A stretch of DNA of 64,000 nucleotides from IMG/VR virus record IMGVR_UViG_3300009158_000031, positions 1 through 64,000 of that record; one strand, 5' to 3'. This document shows, piece by piece, positions 3,089-15,343 of the stretch. Both the position numbers and the translations under genes were made by a program. Under the pieces are notes generated by a model. The model had not been told where the DNA came from and made no database searches. It saw only the letters and a program-made list of their open reading frames with translations. The number at the start of each line of letters is the position of its first letter. Position 1 is the stretch's first letter.

Positions 3089-3156
3089 ATGTTAATAACT
3101 TTCCGAAAATAAATGTCAAAAAAGTTTTTTATTCCACAAAAAAGTATTATATTTGT
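3089..3156 (+). promoter_or_regulatory. Bacteroidota-type promoter, near-identical to 21473-21540
   Basis: TGTTAATAAC...TTTTTTATTCCACAAAAAAGTATTATATTTGT, with TAnnTTTG at 3148-3155. Confidence 0.8.
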
Positions 3157-3176
3157 ATATACAAAATAATCAAATA

Positions 3177-5075
3177 ATGAACATACGAGAAAAAGAAAAT
3201 TTATACCTTTTAGCCAAAACTAAATATTACGAAGGTGAACCTATTCTATCCGATTTCGAATTCGATAATCTCGAAGATGAATTAAAGCTAGAAAATTCTC
3301 AAGTAATTAAAATTGTAGGTTCTCAAGATCTAAAGGATATTAAGTTTAATCACGTATCTCCTATGCTTTCGTTAAACAAAATTCAAGTTCAACGAAACGA
3401 ATCAATCACTGTTGCTAATACTAAATATCTTACATGGTTAACTGCCAATCAAAGTAATACTTCCTTACAAATGGAAGCTACTCCTAAATTCGATGGTTCT
3501 TCTTGTAATTTGATTTACGAAAATGGTAAACTAACTCTCGCATTAACTCGTGGTGATGGTGCTAAAGGCCAAAATATTATTGAAAAAATGAAATTGATTG
3601 TACCTAATACAATCTCTTCAAAAGATAAAATCGAAATTCGAGGTGAAGTGGTTATTCCAGTAACTACGTTCGATTCTAAATATGCCGCAATATATAAAAA
3701 TCCACGAAACTTCGTTGCTGGTATTCTAGGTAGGGATATCGTCGATACCTCAATTATTTCAGATTTTCATTTTATAGCATTCGAATGCAGAATTCATACA
3801 AACACATCTCAACACCATTCAAACACTCTACAATTCTTAATCGATAATCAATTCAGAACTACACCAAAAATGATTATGTTCGATAAATTCGAATATGCTT
3901 ATAATGAAATACATAATTATCGAACAAACGGTTCACCTTACCAATTAGATGGTATGGTTATTAAATTCCCAGAAAATTTAAGAAATGTAATTGGCGAAAC
4001 CGATTATGCACCTAAATGGGCAGTAGCAATTAAATTTCCTCCAAAGGAATCTATTACCACAATCAAAAAAATTATATGGAACGTTGGTATATCTTCTGAA
4101 TTTACACCAGTTGCAGTACTCGATCCAATCGATTTAGATGGAACTATCGTTTCAAATGTTAATCTTCATAATTATGGTAATGTAATACGTCAAGGTTTAC
4201 TTCCAGGTGCTCAAGTAATTATCGTAAAATCTGGTGATATCATTCCTATCGTTCAAAAAGTTATTAAACCTTCTACTGAATCTATCGAAAAATATCTACC
4301 TTCTCCGTGTTCTTCTCAATGTAAAATTGAAGTACAAGGTAATATTCACTTAGTATGTACAAATCCTACATGTCCTAACAAATCAATTCTACAATTAATG
4401 CGAGGAATTGGTACCTTCGGTTTTCGAAATGTAGCCGGATCTACGATTAAGAAAATTCACAAAGCAGGTATACAATCAATACATGATATATTCGATAATT
4501 CTAAATTCAACGAACAAAAACTAATTGAAAGTGGCGAATTTAAAAAAGGAAGATCGCTAGAAATTCTTCTTAATTCTCGAAATAATCCAGAAAGAAAAAT
4601 AACGCTTCCCCTGGTTATTGCATCGTTATCCTTCGATAACGTTGGATTTTCTACTGCTACACAAATAGCTAAGTTATTCGAAAACAAAACACCTGATTGG
4701 ACCGGATTATCATCTGCATCTTATTTACCTTTCTTAAATAAACAATCTACTGAATATCTATCAGTTCTTCGCTTAATACAAACTCTAGAATCTAATGGAT
4801 TTGCAATACAAAGCGAAGAAGTTCGTACAATTTCAGTAAATTCAATTATCTTTGAAATGACCGGATCACCAAAACCTTATGGATTTAAAACCAAGGAAGA
4901 TTTCTTAAAGTTAATTACCAACAATGGTTATTCTCATGGTGATCTTAATGATAAATGCAAAATATTAATTACTGACGATATCAATTCAAATTCATCTAAA
5001 ATGACAAAAGCTAAAAAGTTAGGTGTTGAAATCATGACTTATGAAGATATTCTTAATAAAATCAAGAATATATAA
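3177..5075 (+). CDS. ligA: NAD-dependent DNA ligase
   Basis: KxDG motif (PKFDG), TRGDG, RGEV, NPRN, DGMVIK, PKWAVAIKF, a Cys4 Zn finger and a C-terminal BRCT domain. Confidence 0.95.
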   Translation: MNIREKENLYLLAKTKYYEGEPILSDFEFDNLEDELKLENSQVIKIVGSQDLKDIKFNHVSPMLSLNKIQVQRNESITVANTKYLTWLTANQSNTSLQMEATPKFDGSSCNLIYENGKLTLALTRGDGAKGQNIIEKMKLIVPNTISSKDKIEIRGEVVIPVTTFDSKYAAIYKNPRNFVAGILGRDIVDTSIISDFHFIAFECRIHTNTSQHHSNTLQFLIDNQFRTTPKMIMFDKFEYAYNEIHNYRTNGSPYQLDGMVIKFPENLRNVIGETDYAPKWAVAIKFPPKESITTIKKIIWNVGISSEFTPVAVLDPIDLDGTIVSNVNLHNYGNVIRQGLLPGAQVIIVKSGDIIPIVQKVIKPSTESIEKYLPSPCSSQCKIEVQGNIHLVCTNPTCPNKSILQLMRGIGTFGFRNVAGSTIKKIHKAGIQSIHDIFDNSKFNEQKLIESGEFKKGRSLEILLNSRNNPERKITLPLVIASLSFDNVGFSTATQIAKLFENKTPDWTGLSSASYLPFLNKQSTEYLSVLRLIQTLESNGFAIQSEEVRTISVNSIIFEMTGSPKPYGFKTKEDFLKLITNNGYSHGDLNDKCKILITDDINSNSSKMTKAKKLGVEIMTYEDILNKIKNI

Positions 5076-5473: not shown

Positions 5474-6184
5474 ATGACAAAATACTTTAAGTATTCTGAC
5501 TTTGAGCAAGCGTTTCTTTGCATTAATGGCGAAATAATTACCAATCCTGAATATCGTTCAACTTCTCGATTAGGTGATATGTTAGAAATTCAAAGTCTTA
5601 CATATGAAGTTGCAGATCCAACAACATATAAATTCACAAACGAAAACATCGGCAGATTAAATTACGATTATGCAGATACATTTTATCAATGGATGATATC
5701 TGGATCTACTGATAATGAAGCACTTCTTAAAGATTATCCTAATGTTGCAAGATTCATGGAAAAACCTAAATCTCCTGATCTTCCAGCAAATTTCAATACA
5801 TTCTATGGTCCTCGTATTCTAGAACAACTACCTCACGTTATCAAAGAACTTAAAGATCATCCTGATACTCGTCGAGCAGTAATTTCTATCCTTGATAAAA
5901 GTGATGTACTTCTTCTCGATAAACCAAATGAAACTCTTGAATTTCCTTGTTGTGATTCTGCAACATTCTCTATTCGTGAAGGTAAGCTGAATATTCACTT
6001 ACATATGCGTTCACAAAATATAGGTCAAGTACTTAAGCTGGATATGTATCTATGGGGTAGATTTCAAACGCAAATTGCTGAAGAATTAGGTTTACCTGTT
6101 GGTAGATTCGTTTCAACTGTAGTTTCTGCTCATGTATTCGAAAAAGATATTGCTTACTTAAATGACTTAATTATTAATTCGTAA
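5474..6184 (+). CDS. Thymidylate-synthase-fold dCMP-modifying enzyme (gp42-like, atypical)
   Basis: Motifs YGPRI, DTRRAV, catalytic PC, MRS and SAH. Asp occupies the cytosine-specificity position (RSQNIGQVLKLD). Confidence 0.85.
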   Translation: MTKYFKYSDFEQAFLCINGEIITNPEYRSTSRLGDMLEIQSLTYEVADPTTYKFTNENIGRLNYDYADTFYQWMISGSTDNEALLKDYPNVARFMEKPKSPDLPANFNTFYGPRILEQLPHVIKELKDHPDTRRAVISILDKSDVLLLDKPNETLEFPCCDSATFSIREGKLNIHLHMRSQNIGQVLKLDMYLWGRFQTQIAEELGLPVGRFVSTVVSAHVFEKDIAYLNDLIINS

Positions 6185-7571: not shown

Positions 7572-8126
7572 ATGGCAAACTTAATTCTACTTGAAGGCTT
7601 ATCCAGAACAGGCAAATCAACTATTTCAAAATCGATTGCTGATGAATTTGGATTTCGTAATTTCTCCATTAAGACTAAGATGCCGGATTATGTACAAAAT
7701 TTACCTGATTTTTATCATGGTATGCACGTTTTAGCAAATGAATTATTCAGATCTTTTCCCCATGAAACTTTCATCTTAGATAGATCTTTTTTATCTGAGA
7801 TGGTTTATTCTCAATTTTTTAACAGACATTCATATATAAATAACGATCAAGTCATTTGCGATTTACTTCTAGATAACAAGTTTATACTTGTACTTCTAGA
7901 TAACAATCATCAAAATTATTTAGATCGTGGACCAAAAGATAAAATCACTTATTCTGAACAAGAATTTATTAAACAGAAAGATCTTTTCCAATGGCACTTC
8001 CATAATTTCCGTGACAAATACGATCCACAATCATGGCGAGATAGATTTTTACACATTGATACATCAATCACAACTCTAGAAGATACAACAAAACAAATTA
8101 AAACAAAGATAAAACAAGTATTATGA
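7572..8126 (+). CDS. dNMP (thymidylate-kinase-like) kinase
   Basis: P-loop LEGLSRTGKST and the ILDRSFLSE motif. Confidence 0.85.
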   Translation: MANLILLEGLSRTGKSTISKSIADEFGFRNFSIKTKMPDYVQNLPDFYHGMHVLANELFRSFPHETFILDRSFLSEMVYSQFFNRHSYINNDQVICDLLLDNKFILVLLDNNHQNYLDRGPKDKITYSEQEFIKQKDLFQWHFHNFRDKYDPQSWRDRFLHIDTSITTLEDTTKQIKTKIKQVL

Positions 8127-9280
8127 AAAATAAAGCAGCGATAGTAACCGGTAGTTCAGGTCTTATTGGTTCGCAAACGGTTAAATCTCTTATTGAAAAG
8201 GGATATTATGTGATTGGCATTGATAATGATATGCGATCATATTTTTTCGGATCCGATGCATCTACTAAAGAATCTGAACAAAAAATGTTATCTGATTATG
8301 GTAGAGAAAAATTCAATCCTGTAAGTATCGATATTCGAGATTATGAAGGATTGGAATTCGTATTCAAATATCTAACAGAAAATATAACTACTCTTCTTGG
8401 AGAACCAGTTGAATTTGATTTTGATTTAGTTGTTCATACCGCAGCACAACCTTCACATGATTGGGCAGCTAAAGAACCTCTAACTGATTTTTCTGTTAAT
8501 GCAATCGGTACCATGAATTTACTAGAATTAACTCGACTATATGCACCAAAAGCAACCTTCATCTTTACTTCGACTAACAAAGTTTATGGTGATACTCCTA
8601 ATCGTTTGAATTTAGTTGAATTGGAAACTCGATATGAAGCAGTATCTAATCTTTCGAAAAATCTTATCGAGGTAGATGAATTTATGTCAATCGACCATAC
8701 TAAACATTCCATCTTCGGTGCATCTAAAGTTGCTGCTGATATTATGGTTCAAGAATATGGAAGATATTTTGGAATGAATACCGTAGTATTTCGAGGTGGT
8801 TGTTTAACTGGACCTAATCATGCAGGTGCTGAACTTCATGGATTCTTATCTTACTTAATCAAATGTATTGTTAATAACAAACCTTATACCATCTTTGGTT
8901 ATAAAGGAAAACAAGTTCGAGATAACATTCATTCATCAGATCTAGTAAATATGTTCTGGCATTATCATCAAAATCCTATTCCAGGTGCAGTGTATAATGC
9001 AGGTGGTGGTCGAGAAAACAGCACATCTATTCTTGAAGCTATCGCAACCACAAATACTATTCTTAAAGAAGAAAATCCTGAACATAAAGATTGGAAGAAT
9101 TTCAAAATCTCCAATGATGCTCGAATCGGTGACCATCAATGGTATATCTCAGATCTAACTAAATTTAAGACTGATTATCCACAATGGCCTGGAATTACAA
9201 TTTCATTAGATGAAACTATTCGTCAAATAATCAAATTTGAACAAACAAAAACAGCTGAAGTACTAAATGAAGCGAATTAA
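8123..9280 (+). CDS. NAD-dependent NDP-sugar epimerase (CDP-paratose 2-epimerase-like SDR)
   Basis: TGSSGLIG, AAQPSHDWAA, STNKVYGD, HSIFGASKVAAD and GKQVRDNIH. Confidence 0.9.
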   Translation: MKNKAAIVTGSSGLIGSQTVKSLIEKGYYVIGIDNDMRSYFFGSDASTKESEQKMLSDYGREKFNPVSIDIRDYEGLEFVFKYLTENITTLLGEPVEFDFDLVVHTAAQPSHDWAAKEPLTDFSVNAIGTMNLLELTRLYAPKATFIFTSTNKVYGDTPNRLNLVELETRYEAVSNLSKNLIEVDEFMSIDHTKHSIFGASKVAADIMVQEYGRYFGMNTVVFRGGCLTGPNHAGAELHGFLSYLIKCIVNNKPYTIFGYKGKQVRDNIHSSDLVNMFWHYHQNPIPGAVYNAGGGRENSTSILEAIATTNTILKEENPEHKDWKNFKISNDARIGDHQWYISDLTKFKTDYPQWPGITISLDETIRQIIKFEQTKTAEVLNEAN

Positions 9281-10535
9281 CATTGGCGTAATCATTTATA
9301 CGAAGATTGGTACTAAAACTTCTATTCTTCTAGGAGAATTCGAGTTTTGGAACGATTTTCAACGAATGAACCCTGATTGTGACTTCTATTTTATATCAAT
9401 ATCGAAGAACACAACAAAGAGTATTATTGACCATCAACATCTACTTAACTTTCCAGTTAGGATGATACAGGTGTATGATGTGAAGGATCTTTCCAAGCTA
9501 AATAACCTTTCTGGGATATTTTCATATATGACTAGAAATACCTTCTTTGGAGGTCAAATGAATCCATCATGTGTTCATAATTACGTGATATCTGCTTACT
9601 GTAGCAATACGCTAAACCTTCCTTTATTTATTAGAACTCCTGATTCAGAATATCCCTATTTGGATTATAAGAAAATGGCGGATGTTCGAATTGAGAAAGC
9701 TACACCAAGTACACCTAAATTCATTAGAGAAAATAAACGTTTTCTAGATGTTATGACTGCAGATATCAAATATGAAAATGTTTATTTTGTAGCCAATGGA
9801 TCTCGTCATATGTGTGATTGGGTACAAGATATTGTATACCATGATATTCCAGATGTTATGAGAATAATGGAACCTAAAGAAATTTCTAGAAGAACTCTTT
9901 ATGTTTCGGATGATGTTCTATTCAATCTTCATATTAATAGAGAGCGTTATGCAAATCTAAATGTTGAAGTAAAGAATAATAAGCTTTTGTTTATTGGATT
10001 CCTTTCCGGATCAGTTGCAAAAAATCGTTTAGTTGCTTTAACTAAAATGTTGAAGGAAAAAACCGAAGAAATTCCTATGGATATTATTGGACCTGGAGCA
10101 GATTTGTTGATAGAAGATATTATTCGTGAGGATGTTACTCTTGAAAACCGTTCAGTTTTTGGTGATGAATTTTTCAAGCTACTTAATACATATTTAGCTT
10201 ATGTGTTTATTGGTAAAGGTAATGCGATAAACAAATATGTAAACAAAACAATTTACGATTGTATATCTGCAAAATGTCCTATTGTCGTTTACTCTGCATG
10301 TGATACTAATCAAGCTATTTTTAAGAGCAACGAATATTATTTCTCTAACGAATCCGAACTAAAAACAACCATGGATAAATTAAGAGATCCTGCAATTCGT
10401 AATCGTTGGATCGATGAACAGAAAGCTGATATTGAAGAAAAATTAACACATAACGAAGAGATATTTAAGTTCTCTCAATTCTGTAAGCCTAAAGATCAAG
10501 TTGTTAATAACATTAGAATCGAGCCATTATTCTAA
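9267..10535 (+). CDS. T4 beta-glucosyltransferase-like DNA glycosyltransferase
   Basis: TFFGG parallels T4 BGT NFFGG, and TPDSEYP parallels FTDIRLP (catalytic Asp). The C-terminal KTIYDCISAK...YYFSNESEL parallels BGT RVWETMAS...FYVNNRAEL. Confidence 0.75.
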   Translation: MKRINIGVIIYTKIGTKTSILLGEFEFWNDFQRMNPDCDFYFISISKNTTKSIIDHQHLLNFPVRMIQVYDVKDLSKLNNLSGIFSYMTRNTFFGGQMNPSCVHNYVISAYCSNTLNLPLFIRTPDSEYPYLDYKKMADVRIEKATPSTPKFIRENKRFLDVMTADIKYENVYFVANGSRHMCDWVQDIVYHDIPDVMRIMEPKEISRRTLYVSDDVLFNLHINRERYANLNVEVKNNKLLFIGFLSGSVAKNRLVALTKMLKEKTEEIPMDIIGPGADLLIEDIIREDVTLENRSVFGDEFFKLLNTYLAYVFIGKGNAINKYVNKTIYDCISAKCPIVVYSACDTNQAIFKSNEYYFSNESELKTTMDKLRDPAIRNRWIDEQKADIEEKLTHNEEIFKFSQFCKPKDQVVNNIRIEPLF

Positions 10536-10551
10536 TTCATAAAATAATAAA

Positions 10552-11166
10552 ATGAATATATTTGTACTAGATCAAGATCCGAGAATTGCTGCACAAATGC
10601 ATTGTGACAAACATGTTCCAAAAATGATTATCGAACATGCGCAAATGATGACGGCTGCATATTATTCTACTTTAGGTATTAGCCGAAAGAAAGAAATTCC
10701 GGATCAACAATTTGTAGTAAATGAAATGTTTCGCGGTTGGCCTAGAAGAAATGCCGATGGAAGTGAATGGCATTATGCAATATCACATGTCAATCATCCA
10801 TGCACAATTTGGACACGAGCTTCAATCGAGAATTTTAATTGGTTACTAGATTGTACTGAAGAACTTTGTTACGAATTCACTCGTCGTTGGGGTGGTAAAC
10901 ATTCAATCGAAAAGATCGTAGATTGGATGCGTCAAAATCCTCCTAAATTGCCTTCTTCTAAACAAACTCCTTTCGCAATGGCAATGCCGGATTGTTTTAG
11001 AACTACTAATCCGATTGAATCTTATCGTAGATACTATGGCATGAAAACAACTTACATGAAAGTAGCTTGGATTCGAGGAACTCAACCGGATTGGTGGTCA
11101 GATCAATTTGCCAAAGATTGCGTTAATCAATATTATATTGCAAACCCAGCCTTGTTGGTTGGATAA
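10552..11166 (+). CDS. Pyrimidine-dimer DNA glycosylase / endonuclease V-like
   Basis: MNIFVLD...HCDKHVPKMIIEHAQM, HVNHPCTIW, FAMAMPD and ESYRRYY. Confidence 0.85.
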   Translation: MNIFVLDQDPRIAAQMHCDKHVPKMIIEHAQMMTAAYYSTLGISRKKEIPDQQFVVNEMFRGWPRRNADGSEWHYAISHVNHPCTIWTRASIENFNWLLDCTEELCYEFTRRWGGKHSIEKIVDWMRQNPPKLPSSKQTPFAMAMPDCFRTTNPIESYRRYYGMKTTYMKVAWIRGTQPDWWSDQFAKDCVNQYYIANPALLVG

Positions 11167-11185: not shown

Positions 11186-11791
11186 ATGCGTCTATTAACA
11201 AAAACCGAGTTTGATGCTCTTGTGCTTAATGAATCATATGATGATTACAAGAAAAGCATTAATGAAAATATCAAATATCACATAGAAAATGAGCTAACTA
11301 TATCTGAATCAATATTTAGAGTAGGATCTGAAGCTTATTTAGATTTCGTTAATGAAATGAGAGCACTTTGGAGAGATGGTAAAATATCAATATCCGAAGA
11401 CGATCAATTTATTTTAGAAAAATTATATACTGGCCAAAAAGGAACTTATACCGACCGAGATACTGATCGAAAGAAAACTGTTAATTTTGATGATCCTCAA
11501 TTATCTCCAAAGGAAATTGATACACTCTATTATGTTTATCGTCCATCTCCTTCAGGAGATAAAGATAAAGATACTGGTTTACCAAAAGCTATCATGATTG
11601 GATTTGGTGAAAAAACTGGTCCTGGTGAAGATGATGTTAGAGATAAACATCAGGATCCAGGTAAACGTGCTGGATTTCTAGCTAGACAAAATTGCAAAGA
11701 GAAGAAAGATGAATATGCTTCTGGTTGGTGGTCATGTAACATACATAAATTCTGGAAACAACTAGGACTTAAAACAAACGATCCATGGTAA
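11186..11791 (+). CDS. Putative virion/internal head protein
   Basis: Late motif at 11162, LNE/INE putative cleavage sites, and a C-terminal FLARQNC...GWWSC phage domain. Confidence 0.55.
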   Translation: MRLLTKTEFDALVLNESYDDYKKSINENIKYHIENELTISESIFRVGSEAYLDFVNEMRALWRDGKISISEDDQFILEKLYTGQKGTYTDRDTDRKKTVNFDDPQLSPKEIDTLYYVYRPSPSGDKDKDTGLPKAIMIGFGEKTGPGEDDVRDKHQDPGKRAGFLARQNCKEKKDEYASGWWSCNIHKFWKQLGLKTNDPW

Positions 11792-12114
11792 ATAAAGACT
11801 GTAATTGTAAGAATTGCGAATGCAAAGAAAGAGAATCTTTTTATCTAACATTCGAAGATTATAAACCTTTTACTGATAGTTATTTCAATGGATCTCTTGT
11901 TCGTAAATTTCCTAAAGAGACACCGGCTCATTTACTCAAATGGCATATAGACGATGAAGATCGTACAATATATCCGGTAGAAGAGAATGATTGGAAATTT
12001 CAATTTGATAATAAGTTACCTATCTCGTTTGATAGTAAAATTGAAATTCCTAAGGGAATTCAACATAGAATAATAAAAGGAACCACCGATCTAATCATCT
12101 TAATCGAAAAGTAA
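11785..12114 (+). CDS. Small cupin-like phage protein
   Basis: WHIDDEDR...IPKGIQHRIIKG pattern. Confidence 0.55.
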   Translation: MVNKDCNCKNCECKERESFYLTFEDYKPFTDSYFNGSLVRKFPKETPAHLLKWHIDDEDRTIYPVEENDWKFQFDNKLPISFDSKIEIPKGIQHRIIKGTTDLIILIEK

Positions 12115-12503
12115 TGGCTATTATACAACAAGAATTTCAACACGATCCATGGAAAATGCTTATAGGTTGCATCATGCTAAATCAAACTAGCAATAAAAAT
12201 GTACGCCAAGTAATATACGCATTCTTCGAGAAATGGCCAAATCCACTTTCCGTTTTACGAGCAAATCCAGATGATATTCGAGAACACATCAGACCTTTAG
12301 GATTCTATAATCGTAGAACTGCTACTATACAAAAATTCTCACAAGATTACATATCTAAATCTTTTAATCGAATAAGTGAACTTCATGGCATTGGCAAATA
12401 TGCCGAAGATTCATATGAAATCTTTATTCGCGGTAATGAAAATGTACAACCAACCGATAAGATATTGATTCGTTATCTTGCCGGTGAATTTATCGATCAA
12501 TAA
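12114..12503 (+). CDS. MBD4-like HhH-GPD DNA glycosylase
   Basis: HDPWKMLIGCIMLNQTS, PLGFYNRR, ELHGIGKYAEDSYEIF and VQPTDKIL match the MBD4 glycosylase domain. Confidence 0.85.
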   Translation: MAIIQQEFQHDPWKMLIGCIMLNQTSNKNVRQVIYAFFEKWPNPLSVLRANPDDIREHIRPLGFYNRRTATIQKFSQDYISKSFNRISELHGIGKYAEDSYEIFIRGNENVQPTDKILIRYLAGEFIDQ

Positions 12504-13123: not shown

Positions 13124-13639
13124 ATGCAAAAATTCACCGAATTCGTAAAAGCCCGTGAAACTTCTATTGAAGAAAATGCTAAAGCAGAAATTGCCGCAAA
13201 ATTCAATGAATTATACGAAGCAAAATTAAAAGAAATGGGAGCTAAATCTCCTTTAGATCTTACTGAAGAAGATTCTCAAGTTTTCTTTGAATACCTTAAG
13301 AGCTTAAAAGAAGCTGAATTAACTAAAGCTGACGTTAAGAAAGCCGTTAAAGCCGAGACTAAAGGTCTTGAGAAAAAAGTTGATGCTGCTGAAAAGAAAG
13401 CTGAAGCTGCCGAAGATACTGCTAAAGATGCAGAAAAAGATGCAAAGAAAGCTGGTCAAGATGAAGTTACCGATGAAAAATCTTTCAGAGAGTATGCTAC
13501 TAACCTACTTAAAACTGCACATCCTGATGATTTCGATGAGAAAATTGCTAACAAAGTAATTGATGGTATCATCGCTAAAGTTGAAGATGATAATTGGGGT
13601 GAGGCTATTGGCCGTTTAACTTCTGGTCTGGGAGGATAA
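13124..13639 (+). CDS. Putative internal/prohead core protein, charged coiled coil
   Basis: N-terminus MQKFTEFVKARE, K/E/A-rich, late motif at 13095. Confidence 0.55.
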   Translation: MQKFTEFVKARETSIEENAKAEIAAKFNELYEAKLKEMGAKSPLDLTEEDSQVFFEYLKSLKEAELTKADVKKAVKAETKGLEKKVDAAEKKAEAAEDTAKDAEKDAKKAGQDEVTDEKSFREYATNLLKTAHPDDFDEKIANKVIDGIIAKVEDDNWGEAIGRLTSGLGG

Positions 13640-13663
13640 TCAATAATATAAAACAAACACAAT

Positions 13664-14170
13664 ATGAAACATATTAAAACATTTGAAATCTTCGTTAATG
13701 AAGCAGTTAAATTCAATCCAAGAAATCTAGATCAAGGAACTTTCTTTGATTTTATCGATAGTATGGATGCAGAAACTATTGAAGATTATGGAGTTGAAAT
13801 GGATAACATGACTAAAGGTTATGAAGCCGTTGCTAAAGAATTAGGTGGTAATTTAAAAAACGTTAGCTTTGGTGATTCAGAGAATAATGATTATGAATTT
13901 TTTAAATTCTTAATGAATGTTTCTTTAGGAAGCATGGCATTTGATAAAGGAGTTAAACTTCCTGAAGTAAAATCTTTAAAAACTTTTAATATTCCATCAG
14001 GTTGGAGAGACGGTGATAATCAAGCTACATTGGTAGAAATTCCAGGAGTAGCGAATTACGTTACTTGGTTAGATGGTGATGATTTTTCTAATTTTGATTA
14101 TTGTGCTTATAAATCTTCGGATCTTCCCAAGATTGCAAAATGGGCTCAAGAGAATTACGTAGAATCTTAA
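13664..14170 (+). CDS. Putative internal head protein
   Basis: MKHIKTFEIFVNE capsid-targeting-like N-terminus. Confidence 0.6.
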   Translation: MKHIKTFEIFVNEAVKFNPRNLDQGTFFDFIDSMDAETIEDYGVEMDNMTKGYEAVAKELGGNLKNVSFGDSENNDYEFFKFLMNVSLGSMAFDKGVKLPEVKSLKTFNIPSGWRDGDNQATLVEIPGVANYVTWLDGDDFSNFDYCAYKSSDLPKIAKWAQENYVES

Positions 14171-14276: not shown

Positions 14277-14882
14277 ATGCCTAAAACATTCATGAAATAT
14301 CAGGATTTCGTTGATCCTAAAAGATCAGGGAAATATCAGAGCATCACGATATTTGATGTTGATGATACGTTAGTCGTAACTAAATCTCAAATTAAAGTAA
14401 TTGATACTAATACCAATAAGTCTTTTACTTTAACTCCGGCAGAATTTAATGAATTTGAAAAGAAATCTCATCATGAAATGGATTATTCAGATTTCAAAAA
14501 CCTAGATATTCTAAAGGCCGGTAAAATTATAGAAAATATCTTCTCTATCCTTAAGAAAGAAATGCGTAAAGGCGGAAGAGTTGGTATTATCACTGCCAGA
14601 GACGATCGAAATCTAATCTATCAATTTCTACTTCATCATGGAGTAGTGGTTAATCCAAATTACATATTTGCAGTTAATGATCCTGAACTTGAATTTACTG
14701 GAAGCGTAGCTGAAAAGAAAAAACAAGCCTTTATAGAATTAATAAAGATTGGATTTAGAGACTTTACATTTTATGACGATGATGCTGAAAATATACGAAT
14801 TGCTAAAGAGTTAGATGGTGAAATTGAAGGTATACATATTAAGACTAAACATGTAAAGGTAAGATGGAACAACAAAGACTGA
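14277..14882 (+). CDS. HAD-superfamily phosphatase
   Basis: Motif I FDVDDTL, motif II ITAR, a Lys, and motif IV FYDDD. Confidence 0.8.
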   Translation: MPKTFMKYQDFVDPKRSGKYQSITIFDVDDTLVVTKSQIKVIDTNTNKSFTLTPAEFNEFEKKSHHEMDYSDFKNLDILKAGKIIENIFSILKKEMRKGGRVGIITARDDRNLIYQFLLHHGVVVNPNYIFAVNDPELEFTGSVAEKKKQAFIELIKIGFRDFTFYDDDAENIRIAKELDGEIEGIHIKTKHVKVRWNNKD

Positions 14883-15343
14883 TACACCGAAACGATCAAA
14901 AGATTGATACATTCGCAGAAATCGTTGAATCGATTGCTACTTTATCTGCCGCATCAACTAAGAAAGTTGCATGTATGGCTATTCACAAAAATTTTATTAA
15001 GATTGCATCCTTTGGATATAATGGATCTTATGCTGGTGCTCCCATCAACGAAACAACTGGAACCGAAGAAGATTCGCTAGAACCTGGTAATTCAGGATTT
15101 ATTCATGCAGAAGTTAACATGATTTCGAAATTTCGAGAACATGATCCTGAAAATTATATCGTTTTTCTTACGCTTTCTCCTTGCAAAATGTGCACTAAGA
15201 TTCTAGTTAATTCTGGATTTAAAATGGTGTATTGGTTAGAAGATTATCGAGAACAAGAACATCTCACTATTTTCGATGAATGTGGAATTCATTATGGTAA
15301 TATAAACAAACTCAAAAAAGATTATTTCAAATTAGTAAAATGA
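14864..15343 (+). CDS. dCMP deaminase
   Basis: GYNG, HAE and SPCKMC zinc motifs. Confidence 0.9.
   Translation: MEQQRLIHRNDQKIDTFAEIVESIATLSAASTKKVACMAIHKNFIKIASFGYNGSYAGAPINETTGTEEDSLEPGNSGFIHAEVNMISKFREHDPENYIVFLTLSPCKMCTKILVNSGFKMVYWLEDYREQEHLTIFDECGIHYGNINKLKKDYFKLVK

What the first reader, a model, noticed from the sequence alone, without database searches (positions are those of the whole stretch)
12114..12503. Stand-alone MBD4-like glycosylase, possibly repairing deaminated modified cytosine
Seen: a close match to the eukaryotic MBD4 catalytic domain. Known: MBD4 excises T, U and 5hmU opposite G, the deamination products of C, 5mC and 5hmC. Inference: a genome with C5-modified cytosine needs such an enzyme because host Ung cannot remove those products. 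This would make it a maintenance partner of the operon 1.6 kb upstream.
Basis: partly seen in the sequence, partly recalled or inferred. Interest (0 to 1): 0.6.

Follow-up and report, generated by a model that had tools for sequence, protein, structure and literature searches.

The report
Phage stand-alone MBD4-type mismatch glycosylase
A freshwater jumbo phage encodes a 129-residue copy of the catalytic domain of the animal repair enzyme MBD4, just downstream of genes that most likely put a sugar-bearing 5-hydroxycytosine into its DNA; it probably removes the mispaired bases left when such cytosines lose their amino group, but the same enzyme family also occurs in phages without these genes.

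Summary
ORF 12114..12503 (+, 129 aa) is an HhH-GPD glycosylase whose only close solved relatives are MBD4 catalytic domains (E 3.7e-27, next family 1e-4). The predicted fold superposes on MBD4 at TM 0.90, rmsd about 1.2 A, 42% identity. The catalytic Asp and the base-contacting Gln and Tyr are invariant. There is no methyl-CpG-binding domain and no Fe-S loop.

The upstream thymidylate-synthase homologue carries the published signature of 5-hydroxy-dCMP synthases. It heads a cassette of synthase, glycosyltransferase, Tmk-like kinase, sugar epimerase/dehydratase and second glycosyltransferase, so the genome very likely has C5-modified cytosine.

Relatives of the glycosylase sit one gene from the dCMP methylase of the 5-methylcytosine phage Xp12. 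Cytosine-type synthase homologues occur in all four near-complete glycosylase-bearing viral genomes and in cyanophage S-TIM54.

The family is not specific to cytosine modification. About a third of the 80 nearest viral loci embed it in a 7-deazapurine gene set, others next to an FkbM methyltransferase. RB69, DLP3 and T-even phages lack it. Enrichment against a control set is only borderline (p about 0.05).

It is an uncharacterised phage branch of a known enzyme family. No activity was tested.

The parts
12114..12503 (+). Stand-alone MBD4-type HhH-GPD DNA glycosylase, 129 aa. Residues against human MBD4: Q5 = Q449; Q24 at the R468 'finger' position; F64 at L508; Y96 = Y540; D115 = catalytic D560. 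One Cys only, so no Fe-S loop.
10552..11166 (+). phrog_624 protein with a T4 endonuclease V-like fold. Candidate pyrimidine-dimer glycosylase/AP lyase. Directly adjacent to the glycosylase in the relative G001.
   Evidence: Pfam Pyr_excise E 0.007, below cut-off. phrog_624 E 3e-49. AF2 pLDDT 94.1. Best VIA-align hit 1enj, Z 8.6, 116 aligned, next hit 5.1. Invariant M1, N2 and E28. Synteny.
5474..6184 (+). Thymidylate-synthase homologue, predicted 5-hydroxy-dCMP synthase: catalytic C159; N182 at ThyA D169; D190 at ThyA N177.
   Evidence: PDB 9iqu, E 2.5e-76; 52-54% identity to the Mosigvirus gp48-type protein; signature from PMC13326640
6195..7511 (+). 438-aa protein, probable GT-B glycosyltransferase. 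Its position next to the TS homologue matches the published 5hoC cassettes.
   Evidence: No Pfam or PHROG hit. The language-model look-alikes are GT1/GT4 clusters, a lead only. 72% identical orthologue in G001.
7572..8126 (+). Thymidylate-kinase-like nucleotide kinase
   Evidence: phrog_761 E 1.6e-16; weak Pfam Thymidylate_kin hit; the same position as DLP3 gp78, RB69 gp45 and RL38J1 gp214
8123..9280 (+). NAD-dependent nucleotide-sugar epimerase/dehydratase (SDR)
   Evidence: Pfam Epimerase E 6.9e-37; phrog_540; NCBIfam dTDP-glucose dehydratase and GalE-like hits, below cut-offs
9267..10535 (+). 422-aa protein, possible second DNA glycosyltransferase. Absent from the G001 cassette.
   Evidence: No family hit. 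Its look-alikes include T4 beta-glucosyltransferase clusters, a lead only. Absence in G001.
11186..12114 (+). Two ORFs of unknown function (201 aa and 109 aa) between the endo V-like gene and the glycosylase. The second overlaps the glycosylase start (TAATG). Neither is present in G001.
14864..15343 (+). dCMP/cytidine-deaminase-family protein, conserved downstream of the glycosylase in G001 (78% identity)
   Evidence: Pfam dCMP_cyt_deam_1 E 5.8e-14
3153..5075 (+). NAD-dependent DNA ligase, able to seal a repair patch, at the head of the same gene string
   Evidence: Pfam DNA_ligase_aden E 3.8e-36, ligase OB fold and BRCT; syntenic in G001

Best explanation
The ORF encodes an active, monofunctional DNA glycosylase of the MBD4 type.

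Proposed mechanism:
- It binds duplex DNA through its helix-hairpin-helix.
- It flips a uracil-type base (U, T or a 5-substituted uracil) that is mispaired with G into a pocket lined by Q5 and Y96.
- It cleaves the glycosidic bond with D115 and leaves an abasic site.
- The site is then processed by a host AP endonuclease, or possibly by the neighbouring endonuclease V-like protein, and sealed. The phage has its own NAD-dependent ligase.

In this phage cytosine is most likely made as 5-hydroxy-dCMP and glycosylated in DNA. The relevant lesions would then be 5-hydroxyuracil or glycosyl-5-hydroxyuracil opposite G. These would arise spontaneously, or through off-target action of the phage's own deaminase-family enzyme on single-stranded DNA. 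The enzyme would restore the modified C:G pair and so prevent C-to-T drift.

Shown: the family, the fold, the catalytic residues, the gene linkage and the TS signature.
Inferred: the substrate range, the link to the modification, and the downstream steps.
For: Enzyme identity:
- MBD4-specific sequence and fold match.
- Invariant Q5, N23, T25, G92, G94, Y96 and D115 across 33 phage homologues at 40-78% identity.
- The two nearest characterised families, MBD4 and Mig, are both G:T/U mismatch glycosylases.
- Tyr, not Lys, follows the GIGK motif, as in monofunctional enzymes (for the alignment; the rule is from memory).

Modified cytosine in this genome:
- TS homologue with N182, D190 and C159, and 52-54% identity to the Mosigvirus (RB69-type) gp48-like protein. 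The RB69 protein was shown to make 5hodCMP (PMC13326640).
- The gene order mirrors the published cassettes.
- A separate canonical ThyA lies at G000:204810.

Linkage:
- Same strand, 1.6 kb after the cassette and 6 kb after the TS gene.
- The arrangement is kept in G001, G052, G053 and G055.
- In Xp12 and Donnerlittchen the homologue lies in the order glycosylase, NTP pyrophosphohydrolase, Asp-type TS, deaminase, DHFR.

Distribution:
- Asp-type TS in 13 of 50 glycosylase records, against 3 of 38 control records that lack the glycosylase.
- Among records at least 65% complete, 5 of 8 against 1 of 9.
- The one control record with the glycosylase also has the TS homologue.
- S-TIM54 has one too.
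- At least five mutually distant Asp-type TS subfamilies are involved.

Source of lesions: phage deaminases found next to such TS genes deaminate 5mC and 5hmC in single-stranded DNA (bioRxiv 10.1101/2024.12.05.627091). A member of that protein family lies at 14864..15343.

Expression: pieces of the ORF occur in contigs of four lake metatranscriptome libraries, and one contig spans the junction with the upstream ORF.
Against: - No activity, substrate or DNA chemistry was measured.
- The Arg 'finger' of MBD4 (R468) is Gln here and Leu in Xp12 and S-TIM54.
- Whether the pocket accepts a glycosylated 5-substituent is unknown.
- The experimentally proven 5hoC and 5hmC phages (RB69-like, DLP3, T-even) lack the gene.
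- Many family members lie in other contexts, namely 7-deazapurine genes, an FkbM methyltransferase, or DNA polymerase B and ribonucleotide reductase.
- The close copy in G003 has no TS homologue in 132 kb.
- The statistics are borderline and the genomes are related.
- No T4-type dCTPase was found, so complete replacement of C is not shown.
- No phage AP endonuclease was found.
- The RNA-library contigs do not prove transcription.
Confidence: 0.5

Rival explanations
1. It is a general-purpose mismatch or uracil repair glycosylase of large phages. It removes U or T opposite G whatever the state of cytosine, as part of a small repair kit with the endonuclease V-like protein and the ligase. It sits near modification genes only because all nucleotide-metabolism and replication genes cluster.
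For: - At least 579 viral contigs encode relatives, mostly fragments of jumbo phages.
- The contexts vary: DNA polymerase B with ribonucleotide reductase, an FkbM methyltransferase, 7-deazapurine genes, or none of these.
- The 73%-identical copy in L007 shares no neighbour with the window.
- The endonuclease V-like gene lies within 10 kb in 10 loci of different contexts.
- Proven C-modifying phages lack the gene.
Against: - Tight, conserved placement inside the 5mC cassette of the Xp12 group.
- Asp-type TS in 4 of 4 near-complete carriers, against 1 of 9 comparable non-carriers.
- The gene is rare among other large ThyA-bearing phages (1 of 39) and in cultured phages (16 of 50,697 records). 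A general repair function should be spread more widely.
Confidence: 0.27
2. It is a component of base-modification pathways in general, for either partner of the C:G pair. It would police modified DNA by removing wrong or unmodified bases, or create abasic sites as part of a base-replacement route, rather than repair deamination damage.
For: - In about 25-31 of 80 loci it is sandwiched between a phosphoribosyltransferase and a QueE-like radical-SAM gene. FolE, QueD and a GMP-reductase-like gene are nearby.
- Five such records have no TGT/DpdA that could insert the base.
- It also lies inside the Xp12 cassette.
Against: - No HhH-GPD enzyme is known to me that exchanges bases or excises normal C (from memory).
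- The base-contacting Gln and Tyr of MBD4 are kept. This argues for a uracil-type substrate.
- The 7-deazapurine gene set looks like a nucleotide-level route that needs no DNA-level exchange (inference).
Confidence: 0.1
3. It is a counter-defence enzyme that repairs phage DNA deaminated by host or competitor DNA deaminases.
For: Only the predicted chemistry. Nothing in the neighbourhood points to defence or counter-defence genes.
Against: The gene sits in a nucleotide-metabolism string, not among early anti-host genes. I know of no DNA-deaminase defence that would fit, and none was seen here.
Confidence: 0.05
4. It is a catalytically dead DNA-binding remnant of a glycosylase.
For: The authors of the AXL1 paper could not find the canonical active-site motifs in the Xp12-group homologue (PMC9206674). 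The Arg finger is replaced.
Against: The catalytic Asp, the Gln and the Tyr are invariant over 40-78% identity. The model is confident. In Xp12 the Asp aligns as well.
Confidence: 0.05

Closest known systems
Catalytic (glycosylase) domain of eukaryotic MBD4, e.g. PDB 4e9e, 6vjw, 1ngn, 4ew0
   Same: - Same fold (TM 0.90, rmsd about 1.2 A) and 42% identity.
- Same catalytic Asp and the same Gln and Tyr that contact the flipped base.
- No iron-sulfur cluster.
- Tyr in place of the lyase Lys, so it is expected to be monofunctional and specific for U, T or 5hmU opposite G.
   Different: - No methyl-CpG-binding domain and no long linker: 129 aa in all.
- The intercalating Arg468 is Gln, Leu508 is Phe and Lys562 is Ile.
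- It is encoded by a bacteriophage.
- The expected lesion derives from glycosylated 5-hydroxycytosine rather than from 5mC in CpG.
Mig.MthI thymine-DNA glycosylase of Methanothermobacter (PDB 1kea), encoded beside a 5mC methyltransferase; likewise Vsr with Dcm in E. coli
   Same: Same logic: a repair enzyme for the deamination product is genetically coupled to the enzyme that makes the modified cytosine. Mig is the second-nearest solved relative (E 4.7e-12, TM 0.72).
   Different: - Mig carries a [4Fe-4S] cluster and is about 220 aa.
- Vsr is an endonuclease of another fold.
- Both serve sparse, site-specific methylation in cells. They do not serve a virus whose cytosines are replaced at the nucleotide level.
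- The Mig and Vsr pairings are recalled from memory.
gp65 of Stenotrophomonas phage AXL1 and its Xp12, FMYAK-P1, DoCa6 and Donnerlittchen homologues (annotated ENDO3c, 'endonuclease III' or hypothetical)
   Same: Same phage family of MBD4-type proteins (31-34% identity over 93% of the query). They lie next to an Asp-type TS homologue and a deaminase.
   Different: - About 155-160 aa with an N-terminal extension.
- Siphoviruses of about 60 kb whose DNA carries 5mC.
- The function was left open in the literature (PMC9206674).
5-hydroxycytosine glycosylation cassettes of RB69, DLP3 and RL38J1 (PMC13326640)
   Same: A TS homologue with the D169N signature lies next to a glycosyltransferase and a Tmk-like kinase.
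   Different: - Those phages have no MBD4-type glycosylase.
- Here the sugar genes are an SDR epimerase/dehydratase instead of the arabinose route.
- No T4-type dCTPase was found here.

Membership tests
MBD4-type glycosylase domain (cluster-less branch of the HhH-GPD superfamily) | HhH-GPD fold, with specific similarity to MBD4 above all other HhH-GPD families | tested here: met
   Pfam PF00730 E 2.3e-12. PDB: MBD4 3.7e-27 against EndoIII 1.7e-4. Family profile: 1e-39 against 4.7e-12. Fold: TM 0.90 against 0.72.
MBD4-type glycosylase domain (cluster-less branch of the HhH-GPD superfamily) | Catalytic Asp of the GPD loop (human D560) | tested here: met
   D115 aligns with D560. It is invariant in 9 and in 33 homologues.
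MBD4-type glycosylase domain (cluster-less branch of the HhH-GPD superfamily) | Pocket residues that read the flipped uracil-type base (human Q449, Y540) | tested here: met
   Q5 and Y96 align and are invariant. The roles of these residues are recalled from the MBD4 structure papers.
MBD4-type glycosylase domain (cluster-less branch of the HhH-GPD superfamily) | Intercalating Arg finger (human R468) and Leu wedge (L508) | tested here: not met
   Q24 and F64 in the window; Leu at the finger position in Xp12 and S-TIM54. From memory, EndoIII and MutY use Gln at this position, so this is a variation and not a loss.
MBD4-type glycosylase domain (cluster-less branch of the HhH-GPD superfamily) | No [4Fe-4S] cluster loop | tested here: met
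   The protein has a single Cys (C19) and ends 14 residues after the catalytic Asp.
MBD4 proper (methyl-CpG-binding domain protein 4) | N-terminal methyl-CpG-binding domain fused to the glycosylase | tested here: not met
   129 aa, wholly taken up by the glycosylase domain. It is therefore an MBD4-like stand-alone domain, not an MBD4 orthologue.
MBD4-type glycosylase domain (cluster-less branch of the HhH-GPD superfamily) | Excision of T, U or 5hmU opposite G, without AP-lyase activity | not testable with these tools
   Needs enzyme assays. Tyr at the position of the lyase Lys is consistent.
Modification-and-repair gene pairs (Mig with M.MthTI, Vsr with Dcm) | Physical linkage of the repair gene to the gene that makes the modified cytosine | tested here: met
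   Window: 6 kb from the TS gene and 1.6 kb from the cassette's end, on the same strand. The linkage is kept in G001, G052, G053 and G055. In Xp12 and Donnerlittchen the two genes are one gene apart. A TS homologue lies within 10 kb in 10 of 81 loci.
Modification-and-repair gene pairs (Mig with M.MthTI, Vsr with Dcm) | Co-distribution: the repair gene follows the modification gene across genomes | tested here: inconclusive
   13 of 50 against 3 of 38 records, and 5 of 8 against 1 of 9 near-complete records, both p about 0.05 and not corrected for relatedness. Exceptions: the 7-deazapurine clade, and the absence from RB69, DLP3 and T-even phages.
5-hydroxy-dCMP synthase cassette (PMC13326640) | TS homologue with Asn at ThyA D169 and Asp at N177 plus the catalytic Cys, flanked by a glycosyltransferase and a Tmk-like kinase | tested here: met
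   N182, D190 and C159. 52-54% identity to the Mosigvirus protein. Neighbours. Published rule and cassette.
5-hydroxy-dCMP synthase cassette (PMC13326640) | 5hoC or its glycosides present in virion DNA | not testable with these tools
   Needs LC-MS of virion DNA, or the in vivo assay of that paper.

The most novel reading that the evidence does not exclude
Phage MBD4-type glycosylases form a virus-borne family that has been recruited repeatedly as the dedicated proofreader of hypermodified C:G pairs. They sit beside at least four chemically different pathways: 5mC, glycosyl-5hoC, other cytosine-type TS homologues, and a nucleotide-level 7-deazapurine route. One of their jobs would be to undo the collateral deamination of single-stranded phage DNA by the phages' own modified-cytosine deaminases. 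The family was not found in 400 sampled Pseudomonadota genomes, and its nearest characterised kin is eukaryotic MBD4. It could therefore also bear on the origin of the MBD4 catalytic domain.
Probability: 0.25. Interest if true: 0.7.

Novelty: new member of a known kind. Interest (0 to 1): 0.55.

Why it matters
Phages that replace cytosine by 5mC, 5hmC, 5hoC or their glycosides turn every deamination event into a base that uracil-DNA glycosylase handles poorly or not at all. How such genomes keep their sequence has hardly been asked.

A phage-encoded MBD4-type enzyme next to the modification genes would be the viral counterpart of MBD4 with 5mC in animals, and of Mig or Vsr with methyltransferases in prokaryotes.

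Possible uses if the idea holds:
- The protein is small (129 aa), folds with high predicted confidence, and may accept bulky 5-substituted uracils. That would make it useful for mapping deaminated modified cytosines.
- The gene could serve as a marker for finding modified-DNA phages in metagenomes.
- It offers a testable explanation for the gene in the Xp12 group whose function was left open.

If the idea fails, the gene is simply one more repair glycosylase of jumbo phages.

Tried and rejected
- Megablast of 20 kb of the window against cultured phages: no match. tRNA scan: none.
- Promoter and terminator scan of 3-17 kb: fewer promoter-like sites than in shuffles, and terminators at the chance level. 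No transcription unit could be drawn.
- T4-type dCTPase: no tblastn hit with the Mosigvirus protein and no phrog_173 hit. Xth- and Nfo-type AP endonucleases: none in the 254-kb record, which is 83% complete.
- The PDB codes 9iqu, 9iqc and 9ir2 led to no paper. Searches for a phage MBD4-like glycosylase found none. The MetaGPA paper does not mention glycosylases.
- The alignment of Asp-type TS homologues was too divergent for a collection scan. The single-protein scan found only six close relatives.
- The scan of prokaryote genomes was limited by its one peptide pattern and found only two contigs of one Rickettsiales MAG. A profile search of 400 Pseudomonadota genomes found none beyond that MAG. 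This means 'not found in those searched', not 'absent'.
- The Aeropyrum virus hits are 223-aa EndoIII/MutY-like proteins and not members of this short family.
- Foldseek found nothing for the phrog_624 model. Only the exhaustive aligner gave T4 endonuclease V.
- A deaminase lies within 10 kb of the glycosylase in only four loci, all with a TS homologue, so a general deaminase-glycosylase pairing is not shown.
- Reads: only contigs were available. They show presence in RNA libraries but not transcription, strand or level.
- The large all-against-all protein search was not used, because the family assignment was already clear.
Full report
**What is there.** The window is the first 64 kb of a 254,393-bp viral record (IMG/VR; CheckV completeness 83%). 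GC is about 33%, and nearly all genes lie on the + strand. The record has a T4-like DNA polymerase and UvsX. Its sequence is held by freshwater and lake metagenomes. Its ATG overlaps the stop of the preceding ORF as TAATG.

**The observation.**
- Pfam places the protein in HhH-GPD (E 2.3e-12).
- Against all PDB sequences, the 15 best distinct hits are MBD4 glycosylase domains (E 3.7e-27 to 4.4e-26). The next family, endonuclease III, scores 1.7e-4.
- A profile of 33 phage homologues sharpens this to 1e-39 for MBD4, against 4.7e-12 for the archaeal T:G glycosylase Mig.
- The AlphaFold2 model (pLDDT 94.6) superposes on sixteen MBD4 structures at TM 0.89-0.91, rmsd 1.1-2.0 A and 41-42% identity. 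These include complexes with G:T and G:5hmU. Mig follows at TM 0.72.
- Numbering from the 155-residue chains: Q5 = human Q449, Y96 = Y540 and D115 = the catalytic D560. All three are invariant in the phage family.
- The Arg468 finger is Gln, Leu508 is Phe and Lys562 is Ile.
- There is one cysteine, so no Fe-S loop, and no room for a methyl-CpG-binding domain.

In detail: this is a stand-alone MBD4-type catalytic domain, not an MBD4 orthologue.

**The upstream operon.** The gene string reads:
- NAD-dependent ligase (3153..5075)
- TS homologue (5474..6184)
- 438-aa protein
- Tmk-like kinase
- SDR sugar epimerase/dehydratase
- 422-aa protein
- phrog_624 protein
- two unknown ORFs
- the glycosylase
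- further on, a dCMP-deaminase-family gene (14864..15343) and NDK

The TS homologue is 52-54% identical to the TS homologue of RB69-type Mosigviruses. It also matches PDB 9iqu at 2.5e-76.

A 2026 paper shows that RB69 gp48 and DLP3 gp80 make 5-hydroxy-dCMP. It also shows that Asn at the E. coli ThyA D169 position is diagnostic, and that the cassette is glycosyltransferase, Tmk-like kinase, glycosyltransferase and TS (PMC13326640). The window protein has that Asn (N182), Asp at the N177 position (D190) and the catalytic Cys (C159).

The genome has a separate canonical ThyA at 204810, so this homologue is not needed for dTMP. The 438-aa and 422-aa proteins have no family hit. Their language-model look-alikes are GT-B glycosyltransferases, including T4 beta-glucosyltransferase clusters; these are leads only.

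I conclude that the phage very likely makes glycosylated 5-hydroxycytosine, with a sugar other than the arabinose of RB69. A T4-type dCTPase was not found, so full replacement of cytosine is not shown.

**Relatives and their contexts.** The word search found 275 metagenomic proteins at 68-91% identity, several of which JGI had automatically named 'MBD4'. A scan of IMG/VR found at least 579 viral contigs with relatives. The 80 nearest (40-76% identity) are mostly fragments of genomes that CheckV rates as very large.

Among 50,697 cultured phage records only 16 match. Thirteen belong to the Xp12 group (Xanthomonas, Stenotrophomonas and Janthinobacterium phages), one is cyanophage S-TIM54, and two are records of an Aeropyrum virus. 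The Aeropyrum protein is a longer EndoIII/MutY-like one. No T-even, RB69-like, Acinetobacter or Rhizobium phage matches.

In Xp12 all cytosine is 5mC. In Xp12 and Donnerlittchen the gene order is glycosylase, NTP pyrophosphohydrolase, TS homologue, deaminase, DHFR. The Xp12 TS homologue is of the Asp type. The AXL1 paper noticed this 'ENDO3c' protein and left its function open (PMC9206674).

Clustering all ORFs within 10 kb of the gene in 81 loci gave four main contexts:
- an Asp-type TS homologue (10 loci)
- a 7-deazapurine gene set with the glycosylase sandwiched in it (25-31 loci): FolE, QueD, a phosphoribosyltransferase, a QueE-like radical-SAM enzyme and a GMP-reductase-like enzyme
- an FkbM-type methyltransferase directly upstream (14 loci)
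- DNA polymerase B with ribonucleotide reductase (about 18 loci)

The glycosylase tree follows these contexts.

**Co-occurrence test.** I built a profile of 13 Asp-type TS homologues, in which C159 and D190 are invariant. It found strong matches in 13 of 50 glycosylase-bearing records. These include all four records that are at least 90% complete, and 5 of 8 that are at least 65% complete.

In the polymerase/reductase clade the TS homologue lies about 28 kb from the glycosylase. S-TIM54 has an Asp-type TS besides ThyX.

As a control I took 39 large viral records selected by the phage's canonical ThyA. One has the glycosylase, four have an Asp-type TS, and the glycosylase carrier is one of those four. 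Fisher tests give p about 0.05, both for 13 of 50 against 3 of 38 and for 5 of 8 against 1 of 9. The genomes are related, so this is suggestive only.

The argument is strengthened because at least five mutually distant Asp-type TS subfamilies are involved. It is weakened by the following:
- The 7-deazapurine clade has no such TS, for example in G044, which is 73% complete.
- A 73%-identical glycosylase in G003 sits among unrelated genes.

Within the window's own clade the module is conserved at 52-80% identity. It runs TS, glycosyltransferase, kinase, SDR enzyme, phrog_624 protein, glycosylase and, further on, the deaminase. In G001 the phrog_624 gene directly abuts the glycosylase.

**How it most likely works.** By homology, the enzyme flips a uracil-type base mispaired with G into the pocket formed by Gln and Tyr and hydrolyses the glycosidic bond with D115. 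Tyr follows the GIGK motif where bifunctional enzymes have Lys. I therefore expect no lyase activity (the rule is from memory).

No Xth or Nfo homologue is in the record. The neighbouring phrog_624 protein has a weak Pyr_excise hit, a confident model, and T4 endonuclease V as its one outstanding structural match (Z 8.6, next 5.1). Its N-terminus and a Glu are invariant. It may therefore supply AP-lyase activity, and the phage ligase could seal the patch. These later steps are inference.

A likely enzymatic source of the lesions comes from a preprint. It shows that phage deaminases encoded next to Asp-type TS genes deaminate 5mdCTP and 5hmdCTP, and also 5mC and 5hmC in single-stranded DNA (10.1101/2024.12.05.627091). 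The window, G001, L034 and the Xp12 group all have a deaminase-family gene close by.

Pieces of the ORF occur in contigs of four lake metatranscriptome libraries, and one contig spans the junction at 12114. The tool warns that this does not prove transcription.

**Comparison with what is known, and novelty.** The enzyme is a new, phage-borne member of the MBD4-type branch of HhH-GPD glycosylases. The idea of a repair partner for a cytosine modifier has precedents in MBD4, Mig and Vsr.

I found no paper in the library that proposes this for phages. A profile search found no member in 400 sampled Pseudomonadota genomes beyond one MAG, whose contigs may be viral.

It fits this phage and the Xp12 group well. 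But the family is neither necessary for, nor restricted to, cytosine modification.

**Limits.** All sequences used came from the tools.

Noticed in passing
Related loci L015, L026, L028, L041, L042, L047, L053, L055, L057, L058, L060, L061, L063-L065, L067, L068, L070-L072, L076-L079, L082, L083 (glycosylase at about 10001-10360 in most): In these loci the MBD4-type gene is sandwiched in a gene set of FolE, QueD/PTPS, a phosphoribosyltransferase, a QueE-like radical-SAM enzyme, a GMP-reductase/IMPDH-like enzyme and a cytidylyltransferase-like protein. Five such records (up to 259 kb) have no TGT/DpdA and no QueC. From memory, the set resembles the tubercidin/toyocamycin route, in which a deazapurine nucleotide is built by a phosphoribosyltransferase. 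It does not resemble the DpdA base-exchange route. It may mark a nucleotide-level 7-deazapurine DNA modification in jumbo phages.
   Followed up: partly
Related loci L009, L011-L013, L016, L018, L020, L021, L029, L037, L073 (ORF about 600 bp upstream of the glycosylase, e.g. L073:9187-9990): An FkbM-type methyltransferase (PF05050, E 7e-13) lies directly upstream of the glycosylase, on the same strand, in 14 loci. These loci form their own clade of the glycosylase tree. Its substrate is unknown.
   Followed up: partly
window 10552-11166: The phrog_624 'DNA binding protein' folds like T4 endonuclease V (Z 8.6) and has an invariant N-terminus (M1, N2) and an invariant Glu (E28). It has 745 metagenomic relatives and is unnamed in most sources. 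It is possibly a widespread phage pyrimidine-dimer glycosylase/AP lyase.
   Followed up: partly
window 5474-6184: PDB entries 9iqu, 9iqc and 9ir2 ('thymidylate synthase', 234-238 aa) match this TS homologue at E 2.5e-76. No paper in the library cites them. They may be structures of a 5-hydroxy-dCMP synthase.
   Followed up: partly
G000:C1:204810-205871 (outside the window); also L086, L087, L090: The canonical ThyA of this phage and of several glycosylase-bearing jumbo phages carries an insertion of about 35-40 residues between the catalytic Cys region and the RS.D motif. The open frames are 380-410 aa.
   Followed up: no
G000:C1:79827-80915 and 85036-85965 (outside the window): The T4-like DNA polymerase (gp43) matches in two pieces about 4 kb apart. 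This suggests a split gene, or a gene interrupted by a mobile element.
   Followed up: no
window 13124-14170: Two ORFs of unknown function lie here. The first is rich in Lys, Glu and Ala. This is the part of the 9.5-15.4 kb stretch covered by the longest and deepest contigs in all four lake metatranscriptome libraries. It also shows many strain differences, including a 12-base insertion at 13429.
   Followed up: no
window 11785-12114: The 109-aa ORF that overlaps the glycosylase start begins with a CxCxxCxC motif and has no family hit. It and the 201-aa ORF before it are absent from the otherwise syntenic relative G001.
   Followed up: partly
L114, L115, L117, L118, L223, L224 (contigs of one Rickettsiales MAG): The only 'cellular' genome found with the glycosylase has it on two contigs and an Asp-type TS homologue on two others, each pair scoring identically. 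This looks like phage contigs binned into a MAG, or a duplicated assembly.
   Followed up: no
window 37291-61750: A run of very large ORFs (1361, 681, 1242, 2655, 850 and 864 aa) on the + strand, presumably virion or tail-fibre proteins. Not examined.
   Followed up: no
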